Assembly (NCBI RefSeq): GCF_902713615.1
Contig: NC_052149.1
Coordinates: 165,540,379-165,604,378 of the forward strand
From: Scyliorhinus canicula
Lineage: Eukaryota
DNA: 64,000 nucleotides
Direction of reading: 5' to 3'
A model generated the notes under the pieces. The model searched no databases, was not told the origin of the DNA, and saw only the letters and a list, made by a program, of their open reading frames with translations. The translations under genes and the position numbers were made by a program. Every line of letters starts with the position of its first letter. The stretch's first letter is position 1. Shown here one piece after another: positions 13,834 to 35,822 of the stretch.

Positions 13834-14685
13834 TGTAATGTAAACCTCCAGACTTAGTAAGTAGTTTGACAGTCACACAATGTTTATATTTGGAACAGAG
13901 CAAAATCTCATAACAGCAAGCACATTGGAAACTTCTTCCTTTTTAAATTGTTTTGGGAGGGCAGAAGGTAGTTGTATACCGTTCAACAGAAGGTAGCAAG
14001 TTTTGCAAGATATGATACATGCAGAAAACATCAGGATGTATTTCTCTTGCACCACCAAATACATTGGCCATGTTGTTATTTCCAATGTTGTTATTTTCAA
14101 TATAAAATGCAGGAAATTCATTGTGATACCTGGTTGCTCTAATATGGTAACAGCACATTTCTTCAATAACATGTGAGAACCCAATGATAGCAAAGGTAAA
14201 ATTTAAAACATTAAAGCAGCTGTTGTTTTTGAAAGTGAGTAGCCTTCTACCTAGACTTCAGTCATTATGCAATAATTCACTTAAGGATAGAAAAGGATTT
14301 AGCTCAGAAAAACCAGGAAAAAAATGTAACTATGCACTTAAATGAATATTCAAAGTGAATTCATTCAGTTATGTTTAAAACGTCACATTTTGAATAGAGA
14401 ATTTCTGAACACAATGTTTATTGCAATTTTTAATGTTAGAATCATAGAATCCTTACAGTGTAGATTTGGCCCATCAAGTTTTCACCAACCCTCTGAAAGA
14501 AAACTCCACCTGGCCCACTCCCCCACCCTATCTATCCCTGTAACCCCACCTAACCGTTGGGCACTACAGACAATCTAGCATGATCAATCCACCTAACCCA
14601 CACATCTGTTTCATTAGAAGCTAAATTATTAGTTCATAAGATGCTCAATATCCTACAACAGGAATTATGATTTGTTCATACTCAC

Positions 14686-14733
14686 AAAAGGTAACAGCAA
14701 ACAGCACTTGTCACCAGCATAGTGTTAATAACA
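14686..14733 (-). CDS. ATP6V0E1: V-ATPase subunit e, coding exon 2 ((G)VINTMLVTSAVCCYLF)
   Basis: 48-nt exon bounded by ttttcttccacAG and GTGAGT. Its phase joins exon 1 and it matches GVIITMLVTCSVCCYLF. Exon 3 (WLIAILAQLNP…) was not found in 1-14685. Confidence 0.95.
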
Positions 14734-15970
14734 CTGTGGAAGAAAATAACATTTTGAATGCATGATACACACTTGTTAAAGTAAGCATTTCCCTTCACCA
14801 CCCACCAAAGCAGTTTAACCATAACTCAGTTTTCCTCAGAAATATAAAGCCAAAACTAAAAGCAAGTTATGAACATCTCATCTCCATGGCCTTCTCTCCT
14901 TGCAACATCGCCGACCAGTTTACACAATCAGGAACAGGTCACGCCCCAGTGGAATTAATTTTACTACATTAAAGAAATACCAGTAGAAAATGTGCTATAA
15001 ATAATGAAAATTACATGTCATTTCTATGCTATTTCAATTTCAAAAAGCATTGCCCTGCTGCTCCATCAGCATACATTTTTCTTCCATCAATATGAAAATT
15101 ATGAAATAATTCTTAGCTCATATTACAGTATCCCAGTCAAATAAATCCCAGCACTACTTTTGTTCTTATTGTGGGTTGACTGCAGGAATCTGCTAAACAC
15201 ACATACAGCTGAAATACTGCAATTTGGAAACAAAGTAACATTATTCAACACTGCAATCTTACCAGACATGGTCTCATTATCAACCAAATAAATAAAACCA
15301 AAATGACAGATTTGATTTCAAAATAATTATGAAACTGAATGGACACCACGAGCACCCTGTCTTCATGTCACTCTCTCTATAACACCCATCCTCATCAAGA
15401 CACTCGTCTCCCTTAATCAGGTTAGTCCCCTCAATTTCCAAACAGCAGTGTCTTTCCTTTACTCTCGCTCAGTGATTAACACCTTACTGTGCGTCTTTCA
15501 CTCACTTTTCTCACACCCAATCACAATATGACTCCAACAATCCCCTTTCTGCTCTTAGCACCGCCTATAATATAGTCCAATTCCTGAAGTAGGACACTGC
15601 TTCTAGCTTCTTCTGTTTCTCTCACCGACCCAAAAATATTGGATTTAACACACTCCCCACCCACCCTATAGGTCATCGCCCTCCCCGAATCAAGATATTC
15701 TTAACACATAGAATCCCTGCAATGCAAAATGAGGCCATTCGGCCCGTCATGTCTGCATCAACCCATCTCGCCTCTCCACAAGCAGGTTTTGCTCCCCACC
15801 GCTTTAACAGTGCGGCTTTGCCCCCCTCACCTCCGCAGCTTTAACAGGTGCCTTGTGCCCGACCTAGTGTCGCCCTCACTCAGCGCGAGCTGAGCTGCTG
15901 CCCCCCCTCCCCTCCTAACTCGAGCAAGTCGGGCTCCCCTCTGGTTTCCCGTCGCCAGGCTCTGCCTCAC

Positions 15971-16074
15971 CCTCTATTCGGTCCTTTAGGGATGAACCAG
16001 GGCACCACGCCGCCTACGACACCCCAGAAGACGGTGAGGACGATAATGGGCACCGTCAAGCCGCTGTAACCCAT
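15971..16074 (-). CDS. ATP6V0E1: V-type proton ATPase subunit e, coding exon 1 ([35 protein letters not shown])
   Basis: Manual translation of the reverse complement (absent from the ORF track) matches the subunit e N-terminus (…[11 protein letters not shown]). 104 nt, followed by a GTGAGG donor. Calling it e1 rather than e2 rests on the M-x-Y-x-GLTVP start and the RPL26(L1) neighbour. Confidence 0.95.
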
Positions 16075-16260
16075 GGTGCACACACCAAATCAGCTTCACC
16101 CTCAGTGCCCTCTCCCGGAAGACAGCCTGCCGGAAGTTGCTTTAGCCCCGCCCCATGGCATCATGTGCCCGGCACGAGCCTGACGTCACAAAGAGGCTCT
16201 GACTGACAGCCGGCACCATCCAATCAGGAGCACAGCAACGCGTGGAGGTGGGGTTCTCGC
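16075..16260. promoter_or_regulatory. ATP6V0E1 5'UTR and CpG-rich promoter
   Basis: ETS CCGGAAG at 16115 and 16130, GC box GCCCCGCCCC 16145-16154, M-box TCATGTG 16161-16167, CRE TGACGTCA 16181-16188, CCAAT 16220-16224, all just upstream of the ATG. Confidence 0.8.
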
Positions 16261-21989: not shown

Positions 21990-24900
21990 CTATCTCTGAG
22001 CCAGGAAGTCCAGAAAAGGCTGCCATCGTTTATAGAACCCTTGTATTGAACCCCTCAGGGCAAATTTGACCTTTTCCAATTTTATAAATCCCGCCATGTC
22101 ACTGATCCAGGTCTCCACGCTTGGGGGCCTTGCATCCTTCCATTGTAACAGAATCCTTCGACGGGCTACTAGGGACGCAAAGGCCAGGACACCGGCCTCT
22201 TTCGCCTCCTGCACTCCCGGCTCCACCCCAACCCCAAAAATCGCGAGTCCCCACCCTGGTTTGACCCTGGATCCAACCACCCTCGACACCGTCCCCGCCA
22301 CCCCTTCCAGAATTCTTCCAGTGCTGGGCATGCCCAGAAAATATGGGTGTGGTTCGCAGGACTCCCCGAACATCTGGTGCACCTGTCCTCACCCCCGAAG
22401 AACCTACTCATCCTAGTCCCGGACATATGGGCCCGGTGCAGCACCTTAAATTGGGTGAGACTAAGCCTCGCACATGAGGAGGAGTTGACTCTCTCCAAGG
22501 CCTCCGCCCAAGTCCCGTCCTCTATCTGCTCCCCGAGTTCCTCCTCCCATTTAGCCTTCAGCTCCTCCACTGACGACTCCTCCACCTCCTGCATTACCTT
22601 ATAGATGTCAGACACCTTCCCCTCTCCTACCCACACCCCCGAAAGCACTCTGTCCATCGTCCCCTGCGAGGGCAGCAAAGGGAATCCCTCTACCTGTCGC
22701 CTAGCAAACGCCTTTACCTGCAGGTATCTGAACATGTTCCCCTGGGGAAGGCCAAATTTATCTTCCAGTTCCCCCAGGCCCGCAAACCTCCCGCCAATAA
22801 ACAGGTCCCTCAATTTGCTGATGCCCGCCCTTTGCCATCCCCTGAATCCCCCATCCGTGTTCCCCGGGATGAACCGATGGTTGCCACCCAGTGGAGCCTC
22901 CATCGAGCCCCCTGTTTCCCCCCGATGCCGTCTCCACTGTCCCCAGATTCTTAGGGTCGCCGCCACCACCGGGCTCGTGGTAACCCTCTTGGGGGAGAGC
23001 GGCAATGGTGCCGTTACCATGGCACCCAGGCTTGTACCTCTACATGACGCCATCTCCATTCTTTTCCACGCCGCCCCTCCCCCCTCCATCACCCATTTAC
23101 GCACCATTGACACATTGGCTGCCCAATAGTACCCCAGAAGGTTGGGCAGCGCCAGCCCGCCTCTATCCCTTCCTCGCTCCAGGAATACCCTCCTCACTCT
23201 CGGAGTCCCATGTGCCCACACAAAGCTCAGAATACTGCTAGTCACTCTCCTAAAGAAGGCCCTGGGGATAAATATGGGCAGGCACTGAAAAAGGAACAAG
23301 AACCTCGGAAGCACTGTCATTTTGACGGACTGCACCCTCCCCGCCAACGACAATGGCAGCATGTCCCACCTCCTGAACTCCTCCTCCATCTGATCTACCA
23401 GTCTGGTAAAGTTATGCTTGTGGAGAGTCCCCCAGTCCCTGGCCACTTGCACCCCCAGGTACCTAAAGCTCTCCCCTGCCCGCCTAAGCGGGAGCCTACC
23501 AATTCCTTCCTCCTGGTCTCCAGGGTGCACCACAAACACCTCGCTCTTGCCTAAGTTTAATTTATAACCTGAGAAGGTCCCAAACTCGGCTAGTAACTCC
23601 ATCACTCCCGGCATCCCTCCCACCGGGTCCGCCACATACAGTAACAGGTCGTCGGCATACAACGACACCCTATGTTCCTCTCCACCTCGCACCAAGCCTC
23701 TCCACCTCTCTGAATCTCTCAATGCCATCGCCAGCGGCTCGATTGCCAGTGCAAACAACAAGGGGGACAAGGGGCAACCCTGCCTGGTCCCTCGGTAAAG
23801 CCGGAAGTACTCCGACCTCCTCCTATTCGTGGCCACGCACGCCATCGGGGCCTCATATAGCAGCCTTACCCATCTAATGAACCCTTCACCAAATCCAAAC
23901 CTCCCCAACACCTCCCATAGGTACCCCCACTCCACTCTATCGAAGGCCTTCTCCGCATCCAGCGCCACCACTATCTCTGCCTCCCCCTCAATCGCCGGCA
24001 TCATAATGACATTCAGCAATCTCCGCACATTCGTGTTCAGCTGCCTTCCCTTCACAAAACCTGTCTGGTCCTCATGCACAACCCCTGGCACACAGTCCTC
24101 TTTCCTGGTGGCCAGGATTTTTGCCAGCACCTTAGCATCCACGTTGAGGAGAGATATGGGCCTGTATGACCCACACTGCTGGGGGTCCTTGTCCTTCTTT
24201 AAAATTAACGAGATCAGCGCCCGTGACATCGTCGGGGGCAAAGTCCCCCCTTCCCACGCTTCGTTGAGTGTCCGCACCAGCAAGGGGCCCACTAGGTCCA
24301 CGAACTTTTTATAAAATTCCACCGGGAACCCATCCGGCCCCGGTGCCTTCCCTGACTGCATCTGCCCGATCCCCTTAACTAGCTCCTCCAGCTCAATCGG
24401 CGCACCCAGCCCCTCCACCTTCTCCTCCTGCACCTTCGGGAAAGAAAGCCTGTCAAGGAACCTCTCCATTCCCCTCCTCTCCCCCGTTGGCTCCAACTGG
24501 TACAGTTCCCCGTAAAAGTCCTTGAAGACCTCATTCACCTCTACTCCCTTCCGCACCACATTCCCACTCTTGTCTCTCACTCCAGCAATCTCCTTAGCCG
24601 CATCCCGCTTACGGAGCTGATGAGCCAGCATCCTACTCGCCTTTTCACCATGTTCGTACACTGCCCCTTGTGCCTTCCTCCACTGTGCCTCAGCCTTTCT
24701 AGTGGTCAGCAAATCAAATTTAGCCTGCAGGCTGCGCCTCTTCCCCAACAGTCCCTCCTCTGGTGCCTCTGCATACCTCCTGTCCACCTCCAGCATCTTT
24801 CCCACCAGTCTATCCCTCTCACTCCTCTCGCTCCTCTCCCTGTGTGCCCGGATGGATATCAGCTCCCCACGAATTACTGCCTTCAGGGCTTCCCAGACCA

Positions 24901-25745
24901 TCCCCACCTGAACCTCCCCCGCATCATTCACCTCAAGGTACCCCTCAATACTTGCCCGGACCCTCCTACACACCTCCTCCTCCGCCAATAACCCCACATC
25001 CAACCACCACAACGGACGTTGGTCCCGCACCTCCCCCATTTCCAACTCTATCCAATGCGGAGCATGGTCAGAGATTGCAATGGCCGAATACTCGGCCTCC
25101 TCCACTCTCGGAATCAGTCCCCTACTCACCACGAATAAATCTATCCGAGAGTAGACCCTATGTACGTGGGAGAAGAAAGAGTACTCACGTGCCCTCGGCC
25201 TCACAAACCTCCATGGATCCACTCCACCCATCTGATCCATAAACCCTCTCAGTACCTTGGACGCCGCCGGCCTCCTACCCGTCCTAGAGCTGGACCGATC
25301 CAGTGAAGGATCCAACACCGTATTAAAGTCCCCCCCTATGATCAGACCTCCCGCCTCCAGATCCGGGATCCGTCCCAACATACGCCTCATAAAGCCCGCA
25401 TCGTCCCAATTTGGGGCATACACACTAGCCAGTACCACCTTCTCTCCTTGTAGCCTGCCCCTAACCATCACATACCTACCCCCCTTATCCGCCACCACCT
25501 CCGATGCCTCAAACAACATATTTTTCCCCACCAGAATCGCCACTCCCCGGTTCCTCACATCCAACCCCGAGTGGAAAACCTGCCCCACCCATCCCTTCCT
25601 CAGGCGGACCTGGTCCGCCACCCCTCAGGTGGGTCTCCTGAAGCATCGCCACATCCGCCTTTAGCCCCTTCAGGTGAGCCAGTACCCTTGACCGCTTCAC
25701 CGGCCCATTCAACCCTCTCACATTCCAGGTGACCAACCGGATCAG
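21990..25745 (-). pseudogene. L1 ORF2p (APE endonuclease, RT, C-terminal Cys/His motif) with two 1-nt frameshifts
   Basis: TWNVRGLN…LQETHL, GGDFN, SRID, SDH, RGTRQGCPLSP, LYADD, CTRC…HIFWAC. Split over ORFs 25509-25901, 22169-25621 and 21990-22382. Confidence 0.92.
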
Positions 25746-29485: not shown

Positions 29486-30710
29486 TACCGTTTCACATTA
29501 AATACAATTTGATTTCCATGTGGCCAAATTATAAATTTACTTACAAACTCCTGATTGCATAATGCACAGTTCCATTCATACTTCCACAGAATATAAAGGA
29601 ATTTTTGTGCCCACATGCAGCAATATCCATGTTTGGGCTGATCAAATGACAAGTAATTTTCGCATCAAACCTGGTGCTAGACAATGACCATCTCCAAGAG
29701 GGAGACCAACTCCTCTTCTGGACGTTTAATGGCATTGCCATCATTGAATACTCCAACATCAATATTCTGAGGTCACCGTTGACCAGACATAACAGGATCA
29801 GCCTCATAAATACTGTAGGTAGAATGACAGGTTATAGTGTGCATTCTGTGAGCATTTGACTCACTTCCTGACTTCCCAAAGCCTTTCCACCACTGACAAG
29901 ATACAAATCAGCAGAGTATAATGAAATAATATCACCATCCAGGAAAAAGCAGCTTGCTTTGATTGACACCATATCCACCAGCTCAAATATTCACTCTTTC
30001 CAACACAGGCACAACATGGCTACATTTGTATGCCATCTTCAAGATGCGCAGCTGCAACTCACTAGTTTCTTTAACAGCACCTCTGATCTTTTATCTAGGA
30101 CAAAAGGTGCATTGGGGCACCATGAGATCCAAGCTCCCTCCAAGTCACACACCATTTGACTTGGAACTATAACTTCTACTTCATCGTCGTTGGATCGAAA
30201 TCCTGAAACACTCTTCACCGCACGACTGCAGAGGTTGAAGAAGTGGCTACCTTCAAGAAGGTTCCCAACACAATCAGATGGACAATAAGTACCGGTCTTG
30301 CCTGTGGATTAATTTTTACAAAGCAGTTACTCATCTCTAACCTATTTTTTCCGTTGCAAAATTTTATATTTCTCTGGTTTTTAGGTTAGAGGCTATATAA
30401 ATACAAATTATTGTTTTCAAATGAGCAAACTCGGTGGTTTTACACCAGATTTTATATTTTTGTGTAGCTGGTGCAAACTGTCAATGTATGTCAGGAGACT
30501 GCACATTTGCATCCTATGATTTCCCATACATTGATTTTTTTTAATGATGCAGAAAATTTATATTTAAAATCTTTTGAATGTTATTTCATAAAAACAAGAA
30601 CTAACCTTTAATTGGAGTGAATGTTGCAAGAACTCTGTGGATAGGCTTAGACTGATGGGCTAGCTAGTACATAGTGGGAGAACCTGTATTTTTATTAAAA
30701 AGAGAGCGAG

Positions 30711-30879
30711 GGCGGCACTGAGGACCCGGCCCTGGGTCAGTGTGTGTGGAGTTTGCATTCTCCCCATGTCTGCATGGTTTTCACCCCCACAACCCAAACA
30801 TGTGCACGGTAGGTGGATTGACCATGGTAAATTGCCCCTTAATTGGGAAAAATATTAATTGGTACTCTACATTTATATT
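30711..30879 (+). mobile_element. SINE, short A/T-tail subfamily
   Basis: Same core and tail; 12-bp TSD aaagagagc(g/c)ag. Confidence 0.85.
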
Positions 30880-31591
30880 AAAGAGAGCCAGACTTTCATT
30901 CTCATGAAATCCCTTTCCAAAATGCTGATTGACATTGTTTCCCTCAACACAAGGCTCTCCTTCCTCATACCGGCTGACAGACTGCTCTTTCCCAAATTAT
31001 AGTAGCTGGTATTCTCCCTCAGTGCACAAGTGTACCAATACTGCCAGATGCTGAGAAATCCTTCTACCACTCTTAATCCCATTACCTGTCTTAGTGTTCC
31101 GAGACCTCTGGCACCTTTTCAGTCCTCTTAAAACTGCCTAAAGGTTAATTCCCATCCCAGAATACCCACATTTGCCTGCATTCTGAGATACCTGCCAACA
31201 CTGGTGAATCAATATAGAACATAGAACATTACAGCGCAGTACGGGCCCTTCGGCCCTCGATGTTGCGCCGACCCGTGAAACCATCTGTTTCTTCAGTAAA
31301 ATAAGTTGGCACGATAACTTTCCTGTGCAACACCATAGGAGGCCTGTTATTACATGTAACAGTGAAGGTACCAATTTATATTTAAAGTTTCAAATTTCTA
31401 TATTGCCATATTATTGTGAAAAAAATTCATAAGCATTCTAATTTGTATCTGCTGACATTATGTTTTTGGATGTTCCATTTTTGTGTTCTGCTCTTTTCTG
31501 TTACATCATGCTTGCATCATAATACTGAAGCTCACATCATATTATACTGCATCAATATGTAACAGCTGTAATTTTCATGTTCAGTATTGAG

Positions 31592-32611
31592 ATGGAGGTG
31601 GAAGATAAGAATCAAGTCCACCCCCGACCTCAGGGATCTCTGAAGACACACAAGGAGTCAGCAGGGAGTAAACCTGAGGCGACTGCTAGCAGCAGCTCAT
31701 TCTCCCCTCAAAGTGAGGAGAGCCTGATCCGAGCCCTGATTGATTTAGTGACTACAGCAGCAAAAACAGCTCAAAAGGCAAGAGAGAGTGAGAAAAAAGC
31801 ACAGCTTGCTTTTAAATATTCCGAAGAGGTGCTTTCTTATGCAAGCGATGTGACTGATAATGCTGAGCAGACACTGTTAACAGCCAAAACTCTGTCAGAG
31901 AGACTGGTCAAACATACTTCATATCTGGACTACCAACAAGTTTTCCGATCGGTTTCAGACCTTTCAACAGATTATGCAACATTTGCACAACTTCTGCAAC
32001 TATCAAATGCTGGTGATGATATAGGGAACTCTCGTTTATTAAAAAAAGGGAAAGGGTCCAGATATGGGAGAAGTGAGTCAAAGAGGGAACGACTGTGCTT
32101 CCTCTGTCACTCATTATCTCGCCGTGAAACTGACAATTTCACTCAGAAACGGTCCCAGAACATATCTCAATTGGGAGACAATTATGAGGGCATGATTGAA
32201 GCAGATGATGAAAATACAGATGAGGATGATTTAGGATTTGGGAAAGATGTTCATCGTAAACCTCAAACCACCATGTGTGCTGGGATAAATAGTTCTCATC
32301 ACAAGCAGGTGGAGGCTGTCCGGAAAGAGGAACACATGGGTGGGGCTTTTGTAATCAGCAGACGCAGATCTCCCCGGAGGTCACCCTCTGGTGGCCTTGA
32401 TGGACTTGTGTCACCACTCCTTACTGAAGATGAACTAACAACATTAAAACCATTGAGTCGTTCTCCCTCCCGCCAAGGATCAACAAAGGTTGTTTACAAG
32501 ATGATCCACCGAGACAAATCGCAGGAGAATTCAGATAGCGATATTGAACATTTAGAGGAACCAGCTCATGTTCACGTTTCTGGAACAGAAAATAAAGGTT
32601 TAGATACTTAA
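31592..32611 (+). CDS. Uncharacterised protein, about 339 aa, single large coding exon
   Basis: About 1 kb stop-free frame in non-repetitive DNA. Acceptor-like attttcatgttcAG ends at 31584, the Kozak context is gagATGG, and AATAAA occurs at 32663 and 32992. No TE motifs and no family recognised. Confidence 0.7.
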   Translation: MEVEDKNQVHPRPQGSLKTHKESAGSKPEATASSSSFSPQSEESLIRALIDLVTTAAKTAQKARESEKKAQLAFKYSEEVLSYASDVTDNAEQTLLTAKTLSERLVKHTSYLDYQQVFRSVSDLSTDYATFAQLLQLSNAGDDIGNSRLLKKGKGSRYGRSESKRERLCFLCHSLSRRETDNFTQKRSQNISQLGDNYEGMIEADDENTDEDDLGFGKDVHRKPQTTMCAGINSSHHKQVEAVRKEEHMGGAFVISRRRSPRRSPSGGLDGLVSPLLTEDELTTLKPLSRSPSRQGSTKVVYKMIHRDKSQENSDSDIEHLEEPAHVHVSGTENKGLDT

Positions 32612-35043
32612 AATTCTTCGTAGCAAAAGCATGACAGTATACCTGTGGAAATGACAGATCTAAATAAAAAAAATTACATTTTTTGTATAGAGTTCAGTTT
32701 TGCTGAAGTAGCTCATCCTTTGCTACCAGTGTTGTCCAATACATTAACCACTAGTCACATCTGGCTAATTGAGAATCCAAATGTGACTAACTCCAATTTT
32801 GGTTAGTTAAAATGAAGTGACATGTGATCTCATATGTTGATAAAATGACAAGACAAAGAGCCTGTATCTATTTTTTGATTATTGAGTGCACCCTTTGGCG
32901 TGTCTTGTATGAGTCAACATTTTCTGCAATCACTAATGAGACTGAAGTACTGTAACTGATGGAACAAAAATTTAATAGTGGCACTATGTCTAATAAATTT
33001 ATGTCAGAATTCCAAAGATTGGTGAGGCTGAATAAGTTTTGAACGGAGTGACGGTAATGTTTGTTAAGTAGACACTATTTATTTATATACAGTGTGTAAG
33101 GCATTTTTATTCAAATTAGTGCATGTGTTTAAAGTGATGCTGTAGCGAGCCAGCGATTTCTATTTGGAAGTGTGATATTACATGTACTTTGGCGACAAGG
33201 TGCAAAATGAATACTAGCAGGCATTCTGTGGAATCATGGTATGTATGGTAAATGGAGGCGTGTTGCAAGTAACAGAAGATCATGGAGTAAATGCATGCAG
33301 CAGAGCAACATGTGTGAGCAATGGAGAAACAAAGAGCGAGTGAACAGAATCTGTTGCAAATGACATTTCTGATTTACCACCTCCCTACAGCGATTAACTA
33401 GTAATTGCAATTTATTTTTACCCAAGCTTCACAATTGTATGCTATTGGAAAACCATTACATTTAAAAAGAACCTGACATTTCTTTATTGGCTGTAACTGC
33501 AGAGAACACGTTATGTCATGTTAAACTATATGTGGCACTTTAGGTTTTAGGATGGTAAAGTCACATGTAATTATGCCCTGGTCTCACCCCATAAATACGC
33601 AATCTGTCAACTTTTCACGTGACTGACATTCCAAACATGAACTCAATATGTTCAGAAGATGCTGAGACATGTGTGCACTACATTTTAGTTCCATCAAAAT
33701 CCACCTGGCCACTTTTGCAAGTTGTAATTTTGAGTGGGTGGCACATGGTTAATTGTGCAAGACATCACAGCTGTGCCCAATCTAATCCTTAATTGCATTT
33801 TATTAGTCCCTAGTGTACACCAAACAGGCACAGAAATAGTGCCTAATTTAACACTTAATTAACACAACATGCTGCTTTTTTGTAGCCCTAATTCAGGCTA
33901 GCTAACTGAAGAGGTCTTGTTGTTTTAAAATTAAAAACAAGTTACAAAGTATGTACTTTAATCGCAACAATGAACAAGATTTTCATATATCGGATTTTAT
34001 CACAACAGGAATCACTTGGAATAGTTTGTATAATTTTCAAGTGATGTAGCAGTCATTTTTAAGCTTACCAGTAATGACTACTGTGGGTAAACTGATAGCT
34101 TACTCCCCCATCCTCCTGATTAGATTGCTTTGTTTACCAAGCAACGTGAACATTTTAATCTAAATTTAATTCTGCAGCAGACAGAAAAGAAGCCCATTTT
34201 AAAGTACTGTAAAGCATTCCAAAGCACTTAACCAGTGTTTGTCCATTTTTTGGCAACCCACAGGAGAAATCTGGAAAGATGACCAAAAGCTTTATCAAAG
34301 AGATGGGTCTTAAGGAACCTCAAGGGAGAAGAGGGGTTTTAGGGAGCTTCTTAAAGGGGGGAAAGAAAAGTAGTGAGGTAGAGGGGTTTAGGGTAAATCT
34401 AGAGCTTATGCAGCTGACAATTGTGGAGTGATTAAAATTGGGGGTGTACCTTATACCCCAGTCTGATTCTCATATCTATCACAAATTTCACACACAGCCT
34501 CTAATCATTTAGGCATCAAATACAACCTATTCAATTCAAATGCTACCCTCACAATTCTCCATTGTCAAATAGTTTAATTCCATCCCGGAGTACATTTTTA
34601 TTGCAGACTGTAATTGTGACCAGAATTTGGGATTGGGTGGATTTGTGTGGTTCATTCAAATACAAGTTTGCAGTTCAAGAAGGCAGCTCATCACCACCTC
34701 CTCAAGGCCAACTCGGGATGATCAATAAATGCTGGCCTATCCAACTTTGAATTTTTAAAAATTCAAATGCTCTGTCACATAGTGGTACAATATCGGCATT
34801 TACACTCTTGTTGACTGCTTTCAGAAACTATTATGGCAAGATGCTTTCCCACAGAAGGAGAAATTGAAAGAACTGCCGCTTTAAGCTGAACGTTACTTCA
34901 CACATGAAAATTTCCATAGTATAGAAATTAAATGAATTCACTCCTAACGCAATCAACTGGAATTGAATGAGTTTGGTATTGACATGAAAGTAAGTTAAAA
35001 AATAAGGGTTTGGTAAAAGTAAACAAATTGCAATTTTTAAATC

Positions 35044-35049
35044 TTTATT
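35044..35049 (-). terminator. RPL26 polyadenylation signal AATAAA
   Basis: TTTATT on the plus strand, 26 nt past the stop codon. Confidence 0.85.
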
Positions 35050-35075
35050 GAAAGTAGCAAAGTTCCAACATTCAA

Positions 35076-35204
35076 TTACTCCTGCATTTTTTCTACAGAT
35101 TCTTCCTTGTATTTGCCCTTATCTTTGCCAACTTGGCGAGATTTGGACTTGCGTTCCAGGATCTTCTTACGATCCTTGTCTAGCTTTAGCCTGGTAATCA
35201 CCAC
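35076..35204 (-). CDS. RPL26: RPL26 last coding exon, aa 104-145 plus stop
   Basis: Manual translation [42 protein letters not shown]; acceptor ctctttcAG; total length 145 aa. Confidence 0.98.
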
Positions 35205-35822
35205 CTGAAAGAGATATATAAATTTATTGTTAATTATTCATATGTACAATAGTAGCAAACAGATCAAATCACATCCAGCATGCAATGTATATATAAAAGC
35301 AGGAAGTACAGTCAACTAAGAATAAATCCTCTGTTATGATATTCCGGGTGTGCACTCCCTTCATCATGACTAAAATGTCACAATTCACCATTTCTGAACA
35401 GAACCATCACTTCAATCATAACATTCCTGAAGCCCCAAAAGGACATGACAGGGGAGAAAAAGATCTCACAAGTAAATACAATTGGTTATTTTCAAGTGCC
35501 GTAACTTGTGGGTAAACACAACAGCCAGTTCACAAGCAGTTAAAAGCAGGTTCACAATGGCTGAATGAGGAATGTTTGCTAATACACCAAGAGAAACACA
35601 CATTACAGAACGGGTGACTATTCTTCCCATGTTGTTAAATATATTCAAGACTGAGATAGACAGATTTTTAAATCAGCACAAGAGTCGAATTATGAGGGAT
35701 AAGCAGAAACGTGTAGTTGAGAATCATCACATAAGATCAGTCGTGTGATCTCATTGAATGGCAGAGCAGATTCGATGGACCAAACTGCCTACTTCTGCTC
35801 TGATGTCTTATAATCTTCCCAG

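What the first reader, a model, noticed from the sequence alone, without database searches (positions are those of the whole stretch)
31585..33000. Unrecognised ~339-aa protein-coding exon between ATP6V0E1 and RPL26(L1)
Seen: the only long non-TE ORF in the window, in repeat-free DNA, with an acceptor 7 nt before a strong-Kozak ATG and downstream AATAAA. The protein has an Ala/Leu-rich, probably helical N-half (EESLIRALIDLVTTAAKTAQKARESEKKAQLAF…), a CxxCH motif (LCFLCH), an acidic patch (EADDENTDEDD) and basic RSP repeats (RRRSPRRSP, SRSPSR). Knowledge: I know of no protein-coding gene between these two genes in human. Inference: a lineage-restricted gene or one lost in bony vertebrates; the RS/SP motifs hint at a phosphoregulated nuclear protein. 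Function cannot be read from the sequence.
Basis: partly seen in the sequence, partly recalled or inferred. Interest (0 to 1): 0.75.

Follow-up and report, generated by a model that had tools for sequence, protein, structure and literature searches.

The report
Shark copy of T-ENOL/CDIPTOS gene family
The ORF is a real, expressed and strongly conserved shark gene with relatives across jawed vertebrates (a pseudogene next to CDIPT in humans); in sharks and chimaeras it is an intron-free copy at a different locus, and its function is still unknown.

Summary
Window 31592-32611 (+) encodes a 339-aa protein between ATP6V0E1 exons (minus strand, up to 16077) and the last RPL26 exon (35079-35213, minus).

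It is a working gene:
- dN/dS against the bamboo-shark ortholog is 0.054.
- Residues 234-287 show 17 synonymous and 0 nonsynonymous changes.
- Two RNA-like assemblies from separate studies hold the whole CDS as single contigs.

It is not confined to cartilaginous fishes. Homologs, all labelled 'uncharacterized', occur in chimaera, coelacanth, lungfish, sturgeons, amphibians, squamates, turtles, monotremes and marsupials. In tetrapods the gene has 6-8 coding exons and lies beside CDIPT. In monotremes and marsupials it lies between CDIPT and SEZ6L2, where human CDIPTOSP lies. A marsupial/monotreme profile also finds the eutherian 'putative protein T-ENOL', a truncated form without the conserved C-terminal module.

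The shark and chimaera CDS lacks all five shared intron positions and sits at another locus. The most likely origin is an ancient retrocopy that replaced its parent.

The protein has a confident helical domain (aa 42-151). The rest is predicted disordered and includes a highly conserved module (HKQVE helix, RRRSPRRSPS, SPLxxE, acidic SDSD tail). No Pfam family, solved relative or fold match was found. A phospho-regulated adaptor role is inference only.

The parts
31435..31584 (+). Conserved upstream block: either the core promoter and 5'UTR, or the 3' end of a 5'UTR intron. Candidate acceptors are at 31565|31566 (aacag, conserved in all three cartilaginous fishes) and 31584|31585 (ttcag, conserved in the two sharks).
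   Evidence: It is 87 % identical to Chiloscyllium, against about 75 % at third codon positions and in the distal 3'UTR. Alignability stops at 31435. RNA-like contigs begin at 31563 (X1) and exactly at 31585 (X2).
31592..32611 (+). Complete CDS in one exon: 339 aa plus stop.
   Evidence: It is 94 % identical to P0001, 84 % to P0002 and 64-68 % to Callorhinchus P0003. dN/dS is 0.054. X1 and X2 each hold it as one contig, at k-mer depth 60 and 42.
31715..32044 (+). Helical domain, aa 42-151: one very long helix followed by short helices.
   Evidence: AF2 pLDDT is about 90-96. dN/dS is 0.027. It is conserved in non-mammalian homologs (A10). No fold match was found.
32096..32110 (+). CxxCH (aa 169-173), inside a predicted disordered linker.
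   Evidence: A CxxC recurs in coelacanth, lungfish, caecilian and newt. It is absent in frogs and altered in chimaera and reptiles. The His is not conserved.
32198..32233 (+). Acidic patch (aa 203-214).
   Evidence: An acidic TDEE-type patch is kept across the family (consensus of A4 and A8).
32291..32452 (+). Family-defining core module (aa 234-287): SHHKQVExVRxEE helix, MGGA[FY]V, RRRSPRRSPS, then G-L-x-SPL-x-[ST]-E and T-[IL]-K-P.
   Evidence: It is the most conserved stretch in 23 non-mammalian sequences. There are 17 synonymous and 0 nonsynonymous differences to Chiloscyllium. It aligns to the monotreme/marsupial profile with hhalign probability 98.7 % and E 3.5e-16.
32522..32557 (+). Acidic Ser-rich tail (ENSDSDIEHLE, aa 311-322).
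   Evidence: An ENSDSD-type motif is conserved from sharks to reptiles.
32612..33015 (+). 3'UTR with AATAAA at 32663-32668 and 32992-32997.
   Evidence: The X1 contig runs to 32971. X2 depth falls from 42 to 14.5 after 32675, although a SNP at 32676 could also explain that contig break. The block is alignable to Chiloscyllium up to 33077.
14685..16077 (-). Flanking gene: ATP6V0E1-type V-ATPase e subunit exons (14685-14747 and 15970-16077), divergent from the ORF.
   Evidence: tblastn to the Callorhinchus locus gives 95-97 % identity. Pfam ATP_synt_H matches.
35079..35213 (-). Flanking gene: last coding exon of RPL26, convergent with the ORF.
   Evidence: It is 91 % identical to the Callorhinchus RPL26 exon. 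Pfam Ribosomal_L26 matches.

Best explanation
This is the shark ortholog of a small, single-copy gene family of jawed vertebrates with no assigned function. The family's tetrapod members lie next to CDIPT. Its eutherian remnant is annotated 'putative protein T-ENOL' (mouse Cdiptos, human pseudogene CDIPTOSP).

**Shown**
- The gene is intact, transcribed and under strong purifying selection.
- The family spans chimaera to marsupials.
- Bony-vertebrate members have 6-8 coding exons at shared intron positions.
- The shark and chimaera CDS has none of these introns and lies at a different locus, between ATP6V0E1 and RPL26.

**Inferred, about 0.65.** The cartilaginous-fish gene is an ancient processed retrocopy. 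It inserted between ATP6V0E1 and RPL26 before sharks and chimaeras split, and it took over from the lost parental copy.

**Inferred, about 0.35.** The protein works as a largely disordered regulatory adaptor. The N-terminal helical domain would bind a partner or self-associate. The near-invariant C-terminal module would be a cluster of short linear motifs read by conserved partners in a phosphorylation-dependent way. Its parts are a short helix, basic Ser-Pro sites (RRRSPRRSPS), an SPLxx[ST]E site and a CK2-like SDSD tail.
For: **The gene is real.** The ORF is intact. dN/dS is 0.054 at dS 0.575 against Chiloscyllium, every segment is at or below 0.10, and the core has 0 nonsynonymous against 17 synonymous changes. 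Identity by codon position is 94/97/75 %. RNA-like assemblies X1 and X2/X3, from two studies, hold 95 % of the CDS words and carry it as single contigs. Their depth is zero in the flanking unique DNA.

**The family.**
- phmmer and profile hits reach chimaera, coelacanth, lungfish, sturgeon, caecilian, newt, frogs, squamates and turtles.
- Echidna scores E 1e-12 and koala E 4e-5 in a library of 1.8 billion proteins.
- hhalign of the non-mammalian profile against monotremes plus marsupials gives 98.7 %.
- The marsupial/monotreme profile hits eutherian T-ENOL at E about 1e-27.
- The tree shows one copy per species and recovers the major groups.

**Synteny.**
- Callorhinchus has the same ATP6V0E1(-)/gene(+)/RPL26(-) order as the window.
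- Squamates and a turtle have kinase, gene, CDIPT.
- Echidna and wombat have CDIPT(-), gene(+), SEZ6L2-like(-).
- Human CDIPTOSP is listed as lying between CDIPT and SEZ6L2 (PMC11211608).
- Whale T-ENOL is listed in the same gene cluster (PMC11289666).

**Retrocopy.** Intron positions map to shark residues about 72, 148, 204, 240 and 286. They are shared among lizard, gecko, turtle and echidna, and the last one also by sturgeon. The shark and chimaera CDS is uninterrupted. No CDIPT exon was detected in the 64-kb window.

**Architecture.** The AF2 helical domain covers aa 42-151 at pLDDT above 90. The rest is below 60 apart from a weak helix at aa 237-247.
Against: - Direct similarity between the shark-type profile and eutherian T-ENOL is not significant (hhalign probability 0.4 %). 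That link rests on the monotreme/marsupial intermediates and on synteny.
- No outgroup (lamprey or hagfish) homolog was found, so the direction of change is inferred from parsimony only. An intron-free ancestral state is not excluded.
- I could not search shark genomes for a surviving or decayed parental copy near CDIPT.
- Retrocopy hallmarks such as a poly(A) remnant or target-site duplications were not sought.
- The 5' end is unresolved. It may be the gene's own promoter or a spliced non-coding exon.
- No experiment or homology supports any particular biochemical function. The motif readings come from general knowledge of linear motifs.
- The homodimer test gave no verdict.
- Sample tissues are coded, so the expression pattern is unknown. 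One oligo-dT RNA run (X24) had no reads on the exon.
Confidence: 0.7

Rival explanations
1. The position between ATP6V0E1 and RPL26 and the intron-free CDS are ancestral. The bony-vertebrate lineage moved the gene next to CDIPT and gained 5-7 introns.
For: No outgroup fixes the direction. The cartilaginous-fish proteins evolve slowest and are the longest and most complete versions.
Against: It needs several intron gains in a short CDS, which is rare in vertebrates (general knowledge). The introns are already shared by sturgeon and tetrapods.
Confidence: 0.15
2. A DNA-level translocation in one lineage, plus separate in-place intron loss in cartilaginous fishes (recombination with a cDNA), rather than retroposition to a new site.
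For: It explains the same two facts, new locus and no introns. A possible 5'UTR intron would fit a gene that kept its original 5' end.
Against: It needs two independent rare events. One retroposition followed by loss of the parent is a well-known route. All coding introns are gone at once.
Confidence: 0.12
3. One reading: a gene restricted to cartilaginous fishes, or one lost in all bony vertebrates.
For: No gene is found at this position in tetrapod loci.
Against: There are clear homologs in coelacanth, lungfish, sturgeons, amphibians, reptiles, monotremes and marsupials, and truncated ones in eutherians.
Confidence: 0.02
4. A chance, TE-derived or decaying ORF with no function.
For: There is no Pfam domain. 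LINE copies are nearby.
Against: dN/dS is 0.054. Conservation extends from chimaera to marsupials. Depth is single-copy. It is transcribed. It has no RT, transposase or other TE domain.
Confidence: 0.01

Closest known systems
RefSeq/GenBank 'uncharacterized protein' orthologs: Chiloscyllium punctatum chiPu_0007993 (P0001) and Callorhinchus milii LOC103187233 (P0003)
   Same: Same length. They are 94 % and 64-68 % identical. Both have a single coding exon. In Callorhinchus the neighbours are the same, ATP6V0E1 and RPL26.
   Different: Nothing of substance. These are the same gene in other cartilaginous fishes. None has a name, a function or a Pfam family.
CDIPT-adjacent uncharacterized genes of tetrapods, e.g. 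Sceloporus LOC121932750, Mauremys LOC123369168, Tachyglossus LOC119942764, Vombatus LOC114043626
   Same: They share the helical N-domain (non-mammals), the acidic patch, the HKQVE/RRRSPRRSPS/SPL core module and the acidic tail. There is one copy per genome.
   Different: They have 6-8 coding exons against one. They lie next to CDIPT rather than between ATP6V0E1 and RPL26. The mammalian forms have replaced most of the N-terminal domain with a mammal-specific block.
Eutherian 'putative protein T-ENOL' (mouse Cdiptos; human CDIPTOSP, classed as a pseudogene)
   Same: It belongs to the same family by transitive homology through monotreme and marsupial proteins (E about 1e-27). By synteny it lies between CDIPT and SEZ6L2, or in that gene cluster.
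   Different: It is only about 110-125 aa. It lacks the whole conserved C-terminal module. Direct profile similarity to the shark-type proteins is not significant. No functional study was found.
'Orphan' retrogenes: processed copies that outlived their parental gene
   Same: All coding introns are lost at once, the site is new, and there is a single surviving copy.
   Different: The age (before the shark-chimaera split) would have erased a poly(A) tail or target-site duplications, and I did not look for them. Loss of the parent could not be checked. The direction of change is not fixed by an outgroup.

Membership tests
T-ENOL / CDIPTOS-type vertebrate gene family (no Pfam entry) | Significant sequence homology to the CDIPT-adjacent genes of tetrapods | tested here: met
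   The lizard hit scores E 9e-21 with the single sequence. Profile hits range from E 1e-70 to 1e-12 for gecko, turtle, caecilian, frogs and echidna. hhalign against monotremes plus marsupials gives 98.7 %.
T-ENOL / CDIPTOS-type vertebrate gene family (no Pfam entry) | Conserved C-terminal module (HKQVE helix, RRRSPRRSPS, SPLxx[ST]E) | tested here: met
   It is present at aa 234-287 and is the most conserved block of the family.
T-ENOL / CDIPTOS-type vertebrate gene family (no Pfam entry) | Direct similarity to the eutherian proteins that carry the name T-ENOL | tested here: not met
   hhalign of A8 against A7 gives probability 0.4 %. Eutherian T-ENOL keeps only a mammal-specific N-terminal part. 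The link is transitive, through and synteny.
T-ENOL / CDIPTOS-type vertebrate gene family (no Pfam entry) | Position next to CDIPT | tested here: not met
   In the window and in Callorhinchus the gene lies between ATP6V0E1 and RPL26. No match to turtle CDIPT exons was found in the 64-kb window.
T-ENOL / CDIPTOS-type vertebrate gene family (no Pfam entry) | Multi-exon CDS with the shared intron positions | tested here: not met
   The CDS is uninterrupted in the window, in Chiloscyllium and in Callorhinchus. There are 6-8 exons in lizard, gecko, turtle and echidna, and at least 2 in sturgeon.
Processed retrogene | Lacks all the coding introns of its multi-exon relatives and lies at a different locus | tested here: met
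Processed retrogene | Poly(A) remnant and target-site duplications | not tested
   They are expected to be erased, because the event predates the shark-chimaera split. Only the transcript block is alignable even between two sharks.
Processed retrogene | Parental multi-exon copy present or decayed at the ancestral locus in the same genome | not testable with these tools
   No shark genome collection can be searched here. Protein searches found only one cartilaginous-fish cluster.
SR / RS-domain splicing proteins | RRM domain plus a long RS repeat domain | tested here: not met
   There is no Pfam domain at all. There are only two short RSP-type motifs.
c-type cytochrome (CxxCH haem site) | Conserved CxxCH within a folded haem-binding domain | tested here: not met
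   The His is not conserved in orthologs, and the motif is altered in chimaera and absent in frogs. The region is predicted disordered. There is no cytochrome Pfam match.

The most novel reading that the evidence does not exclude
A protein family that spans the jawed vertebrates and has a near-invariant 55-residue module has so far escaped naming. In cartilaginous fishes it survives only as a retrogene that predates the shark-chimaera split and replaced its parent. Eutherians truncated it to T-ENOL, and in humans it decayed to the pseudogene CDIPTOSP inside the 16p11.2 copy-number region. The conserved module would be the docking site for a still unidentified, phosphorylation-dependent partner.
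Probability: 0.45. Interest if true: 0.55.

Novelty: new member of a known kind. Interest (0 to 1): 0.4.

Why it matters
The finding turns an 'unknown ORF' into a defined member of a vertebrate-wide orphan family.

- **Ancestral form.** Sharks and chimaeras give the slowest-evolving, full-length version of a protein that is truncated in eutherians and a pseudogene in humans, inside the 16p11.2 region.
- **Target for function.** The most constrained part is aa 234-287, which shows no amino-acid change between two sharks at dS of about 0.6. That is the obvious stretch to use for finding binding partners.
- **Evolutionary case.** If the retrocopy reading holds, this is a very old case of a retrogene replacing its parent. 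It is also a reminder that a break in synteny does not mean a gene is lineage-specific.
- **Annotation.** The shark gene can be labelled as T-ENOL/CDIPTOS-like rather than left anonymous.

Tried and rejected
- **Pfam.** The ORF has no match. Scans of 46 family members and 11 mammalian members gave only scattered chance hits.
- **PDB by sequence profile.** The only hit was a designed helical bundle (E 1e-5), which reflects low-complexity helix composition. I rejected it.
- **Fold searches.**
  - Whole model: PDB Foldseek found nothing, VIA gave Z of 5.9 or less on generic long helices, and AFDB clusters gave TM of 0.21 or less.
  - Domain-only model: PDB and AFDB gave nothing.
- **ESM Atlas.** Feature searches with the whole protein, the N-domain and the C-module gave no usable hit.
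- **Phage tblastn.** No match. This was an uninformative choice of collection.
- **Homodimer test (aa 36-156, two copies).** 'No answer', score 0.01. This is no evidence either way.
- **Earlier findings of this scan.** Nothing near the place or under the words CDIPT, TAOK2 or SEZ6L2.
- **Contig look-ups.** Those for the coelacanth protein and for one Sceloporus isoform were not on record. The caecilian and lungfish genes were too long to fetch, at 158 kb and 1.2 Mb.
- **Sturgeon synteny.** Unresolved. The neighbour is a 478-aa kinase with no detectable match to the turtle locus.
- **Rfam, 30500-35500.** No RNA family.
- **DARPP-32 / inhibitor-1 idea.** The 'QVE...RRR-S/T-P' stretch recalled these PP1 inhibitors. 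That is only a resemblance from memory. No Pfam match supports it and there is no RVxF motif, so I dropped it.
- **CxxCH as a haem site.** Rejected because it is not conserved.
- **Upstream ATG at 31577 as the start.** Rejected because it is not conserved in Chiloscyllium.
- **Exact 5' end.** Could not be settled. Contigs start at 31563 and 31585, both beside CAG. The single read-laying run could not reach the ATP6V0E1 promoter 15 kb upstream.
Full report
**1. The observation**

The window holds one ORF at 31577..32611 on the plus strand. The conserved start is the ATG at 31592, in the context gagATGg, giving 339 aa. The ATG five codons upstream reads ATA in the bamboo shark.

- the 'ttcag' 7 nt before the ATG;
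- the two AATAAA signals (32663-32668 and 32992-32997);
- the LCFLCH, acidic and RSP motifs.

The flanking genes are as stated. V-ATPase e-subunit exons lie at 14685-14747 and 15970-16077 on the minus strand. The last RPL26 coding exon lies at 35079-35213 on the minus strand.

The other long ORFs I checked are LINE pieces or have no Pfam match. They include an apparently intact 1150-aa ORF2 at 22172-25621(-). The exon is single-copy DNA.

**2. It is a real gene**

Comparison with the Chiloscyllium punctatum ortholog (locus L003) gives these figures:

| Measure | Value |
|---|---|
| dS | 0.575 |
| dN | 0.031 |
| dN/dS, whole CDS | 0.054 |
| dN/dS, each of five segments | 0.10 or less |
| aa 234-287 | 17 synonymous, 0 nonsynonymous differences |
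| Identity at codon positions 1/2/3 | 94 / 97 / 75 % |
| Identity, distal 3'UTR | 76 % |
| Identity, 150 bp upstream of the exon | 87 % |

Within 10 kb on either side, the only long alignable block between the two sharks is 31435-33077. That block is the transcription unit plus a short upstream element.

Two small, RNA-like assemblies from different studies (X1, and X2/X3) hold 95 % of the CDS words. Each carries the CDS as a single contig:
- X1 covers 31563-32971 at depth 60.
- X2 covers 31585-32675 at depth 42.

Both have zero depth on the unique DNA around the exon. X15 covers everything at depth 3-7 and is evidently genomic.

An oligo-dT RNA run (X24) had no reads on the exon, so expression is not ubiquitous. 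Tissues are not given.

**3. What it is related to**

There is no Pfam family.

*Sequence searches*
- A single-sequence search found five proteins, all 'uncharacterized': bamboo shark (94 %), another shark transcript (84 %), Callorhinchus (64 %), Latimeria (37 %) and a fence lizard.
- An exhaustive profile search of 1.84 billion representatives found only 19 clusters.
- Their names add lungfish, sturgeons, a caecilian, a newt, frogs, geckos, snakes, turtles, echidna (E 1e-12) and koala (E 4e-5).
- A second profile search added many squamates, turtles, platypus and eight marsupials.
- No bird, crocodilian or teleost appeared. These are annotated-protein searches, so absence is not proven.

*Link to mammals*
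- A profile of the marsupial and monotreme proteins (A5) then found eutherian proteins named 'putative protein T-ENOL', at E about 1e-27.
- These are 110-125 aa. They share only the mammal-specific N-terminal block and stop before the family's conserved module.
- The non-mammalian profile matches the monotreme/marsupial profile (hhalign 98.7 %, E 3.5e-16).
- It does not match the eutherian profile, so the link to T-ENOL is transitive.
- A tree shows one copy per species. The major groups are recovered, cartilaginous fishes have short branches and mammals sit on a long stem.

**4. Genomic context and gene structure**

| Lineage | Gene order |
|---|---|
| Callorhinchus and the window | ATP6V0E1(-), gene(+), RPL26(-) |
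| Two squamates and a turtle | large protein kinase, gene, CDIPT |
| Echidna and wombat | (MVP), CDIPT(-), gene(+), CUB-Sushi SEZ6L2-like gene(-) |

The echidna and wombat position is exactly where a review of the 16p11.2 region lists human 'CDIP transferase opposite strand, pseudogene' (CDIPTOSP), between CDIPT and SEZ6L2 (PMC11211608). A whale study lists T-ENOL in the same gene cluster (PMC11289666). No turtle-like CDIPT exon was detected in the 64-kb window.

The CDS of lizard, gecko, turtle and echidna is split into 6-8 exons. Sturgeon has at least two. The shark and chimaera CDS is uninterrupted.

Mapped onto the alignment, the intron positions coincide between lineages at shark residues about 72, 148, 204, 240 and 286. 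The last is shared by lizard, turtle, echidna and sturgeon.

All coding introns are missing and the locus is different. The simplest reading is a processed retrocopy fixed before sharks and chimaeras split, followed by loss of the parent. I put this at about 0.65.

The alternatives cannot be excluded without a cyclostome outgroup or a search of shark genomes. They are an ancestral intron-free gene with later intron gain, or a translocation plus in-place intron loss.

**5. The 5' end is open**

- The X1 contig begins at 31563, at the CAG of an 'aacag' that is conserved in all three cartilaginous fishes.
- Contig ends beside AG dinucleotides would fit graph branch points at splice acceptors.
- Both are also compatible with transcription starting in the conserved 150-bp block.
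- In Callorhinchus the ORF lies only about 1.2 kb from ATP6V0E1 exon 1, head to head. In the window the distance is 15.5 kb, with a LINE in between.

**6. The protein**

- AlphaFold2 with the family alignment gives a confident helical domain at aa 42-151 (pLDDT about 90-96). It is a helix of about 66-69 residues followed by short helices.
- Everything else is below about 60, apart from a weak helix at aa 237-247.
- Neither the whole model nor the domain alone finds a specific fold. PDB Foldseek finds nothing, VIA gives Z of 5.9 or less on generic long helices, and AFDB clusters give low TM.
- The homodimer test returned no verdict.
- The strongest conservation is in aa 234-287, followed by an acidic ENSDSD tail.

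My working model is inference from the nature of these motifs, not a tested result. I read the protein as a mostly disordered regulatory adaptor:
- The helical domain would bind a partner.
- The C-terminal module would be a composite docking site controlled by phosphorylation. It has basic Ser-Pro sites, an RSxS-type 14-3-3-like core, an [LV]SPLx[ST]E site that resembles proline-directed phospho-motifs, and CK2-type acidic serines.

I give this about 0.35.

**7. Novelty and verdict**

The gene is not new as an annotation, because shark and chimaera orthologs are already in GenBank and RefSeq as hypothetical proteins. It has no name, no family entry and no literature.

- the assignment to the CDIPT-adjacent T-ENOL/CDIPTOS family;
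- the finding that eutherians keep only a truncated form;
- the evidence for an intron-free, relocated copy in cartilaginous fishes.

Its interpretation as lineage-restricted or lost in bony vertebrates is wrong for the family and right only for the locus.

Noticed in passing
window 22172-25621 (-): This is an apparently intact 1150-aa LINE ORF2 with Exo_endo_phos and RVT_1 domains. It lies between ATP6V0E1 exon 1 and the gene. Together with other repeats it stretches an interval of about 1.2 kb in Callorhinchus to 15.5 kb here.
   Followed up: partly
window 30652-30848 and 31046-31439: These are very highly repeated short elements. K-mer depth reaches about 1e5 in the DNA run X15 and thousands in the RNA-like runs. 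They abut the conserved upstream block of the gene. The piece 31211-31271 recurs at a non-orthologous place in the Chiloscyllium locus (L003 4867-4927, 93 %). They look SINE-like.
   Followed up: no
window 39970-40842 (-) and surrounding ORFs at 38.3-42.7 kb: This is a second reverse-transcriptase-bearing ORF (RVT_1) inside a cluster of overlapping long ORFs on both strands. It is probably a degraded retroelement downstream of RPL26.
   Followed up: partly
window 6.3-10 kb and 53.2-54.3 kb; L001 14.7-17.4 kb: Protein-level similarity of 40-65 % links repeated ORFs in the window to a stretch of the Callorhinchus locus. This suggests an old TE family shared by sharks and chimaeras.
   Followed up: no
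Alignments A5 and A6 (monotreme, marsupial and eutherian proteins): Mammalian members carry a strongly conserved block (DQGTQ[MI]SRH ... TRGTDTRSDRNRTR.K.HLLP) that non-mammals lack. It is the part that eutherian T-ENOL retains, so the eutherian remnant may still be under selection for a mammal-specific function.
   Followed up: partly
window 32676 and 32972: Contig breaks or variants in several runs (A>G at 32676 in X1, and breaks at 32972 in X1 and X15) suggest polymorphic sites in the 3'UTR. They complicate reading poly(A) site usage from contigs.
   Followed up: no
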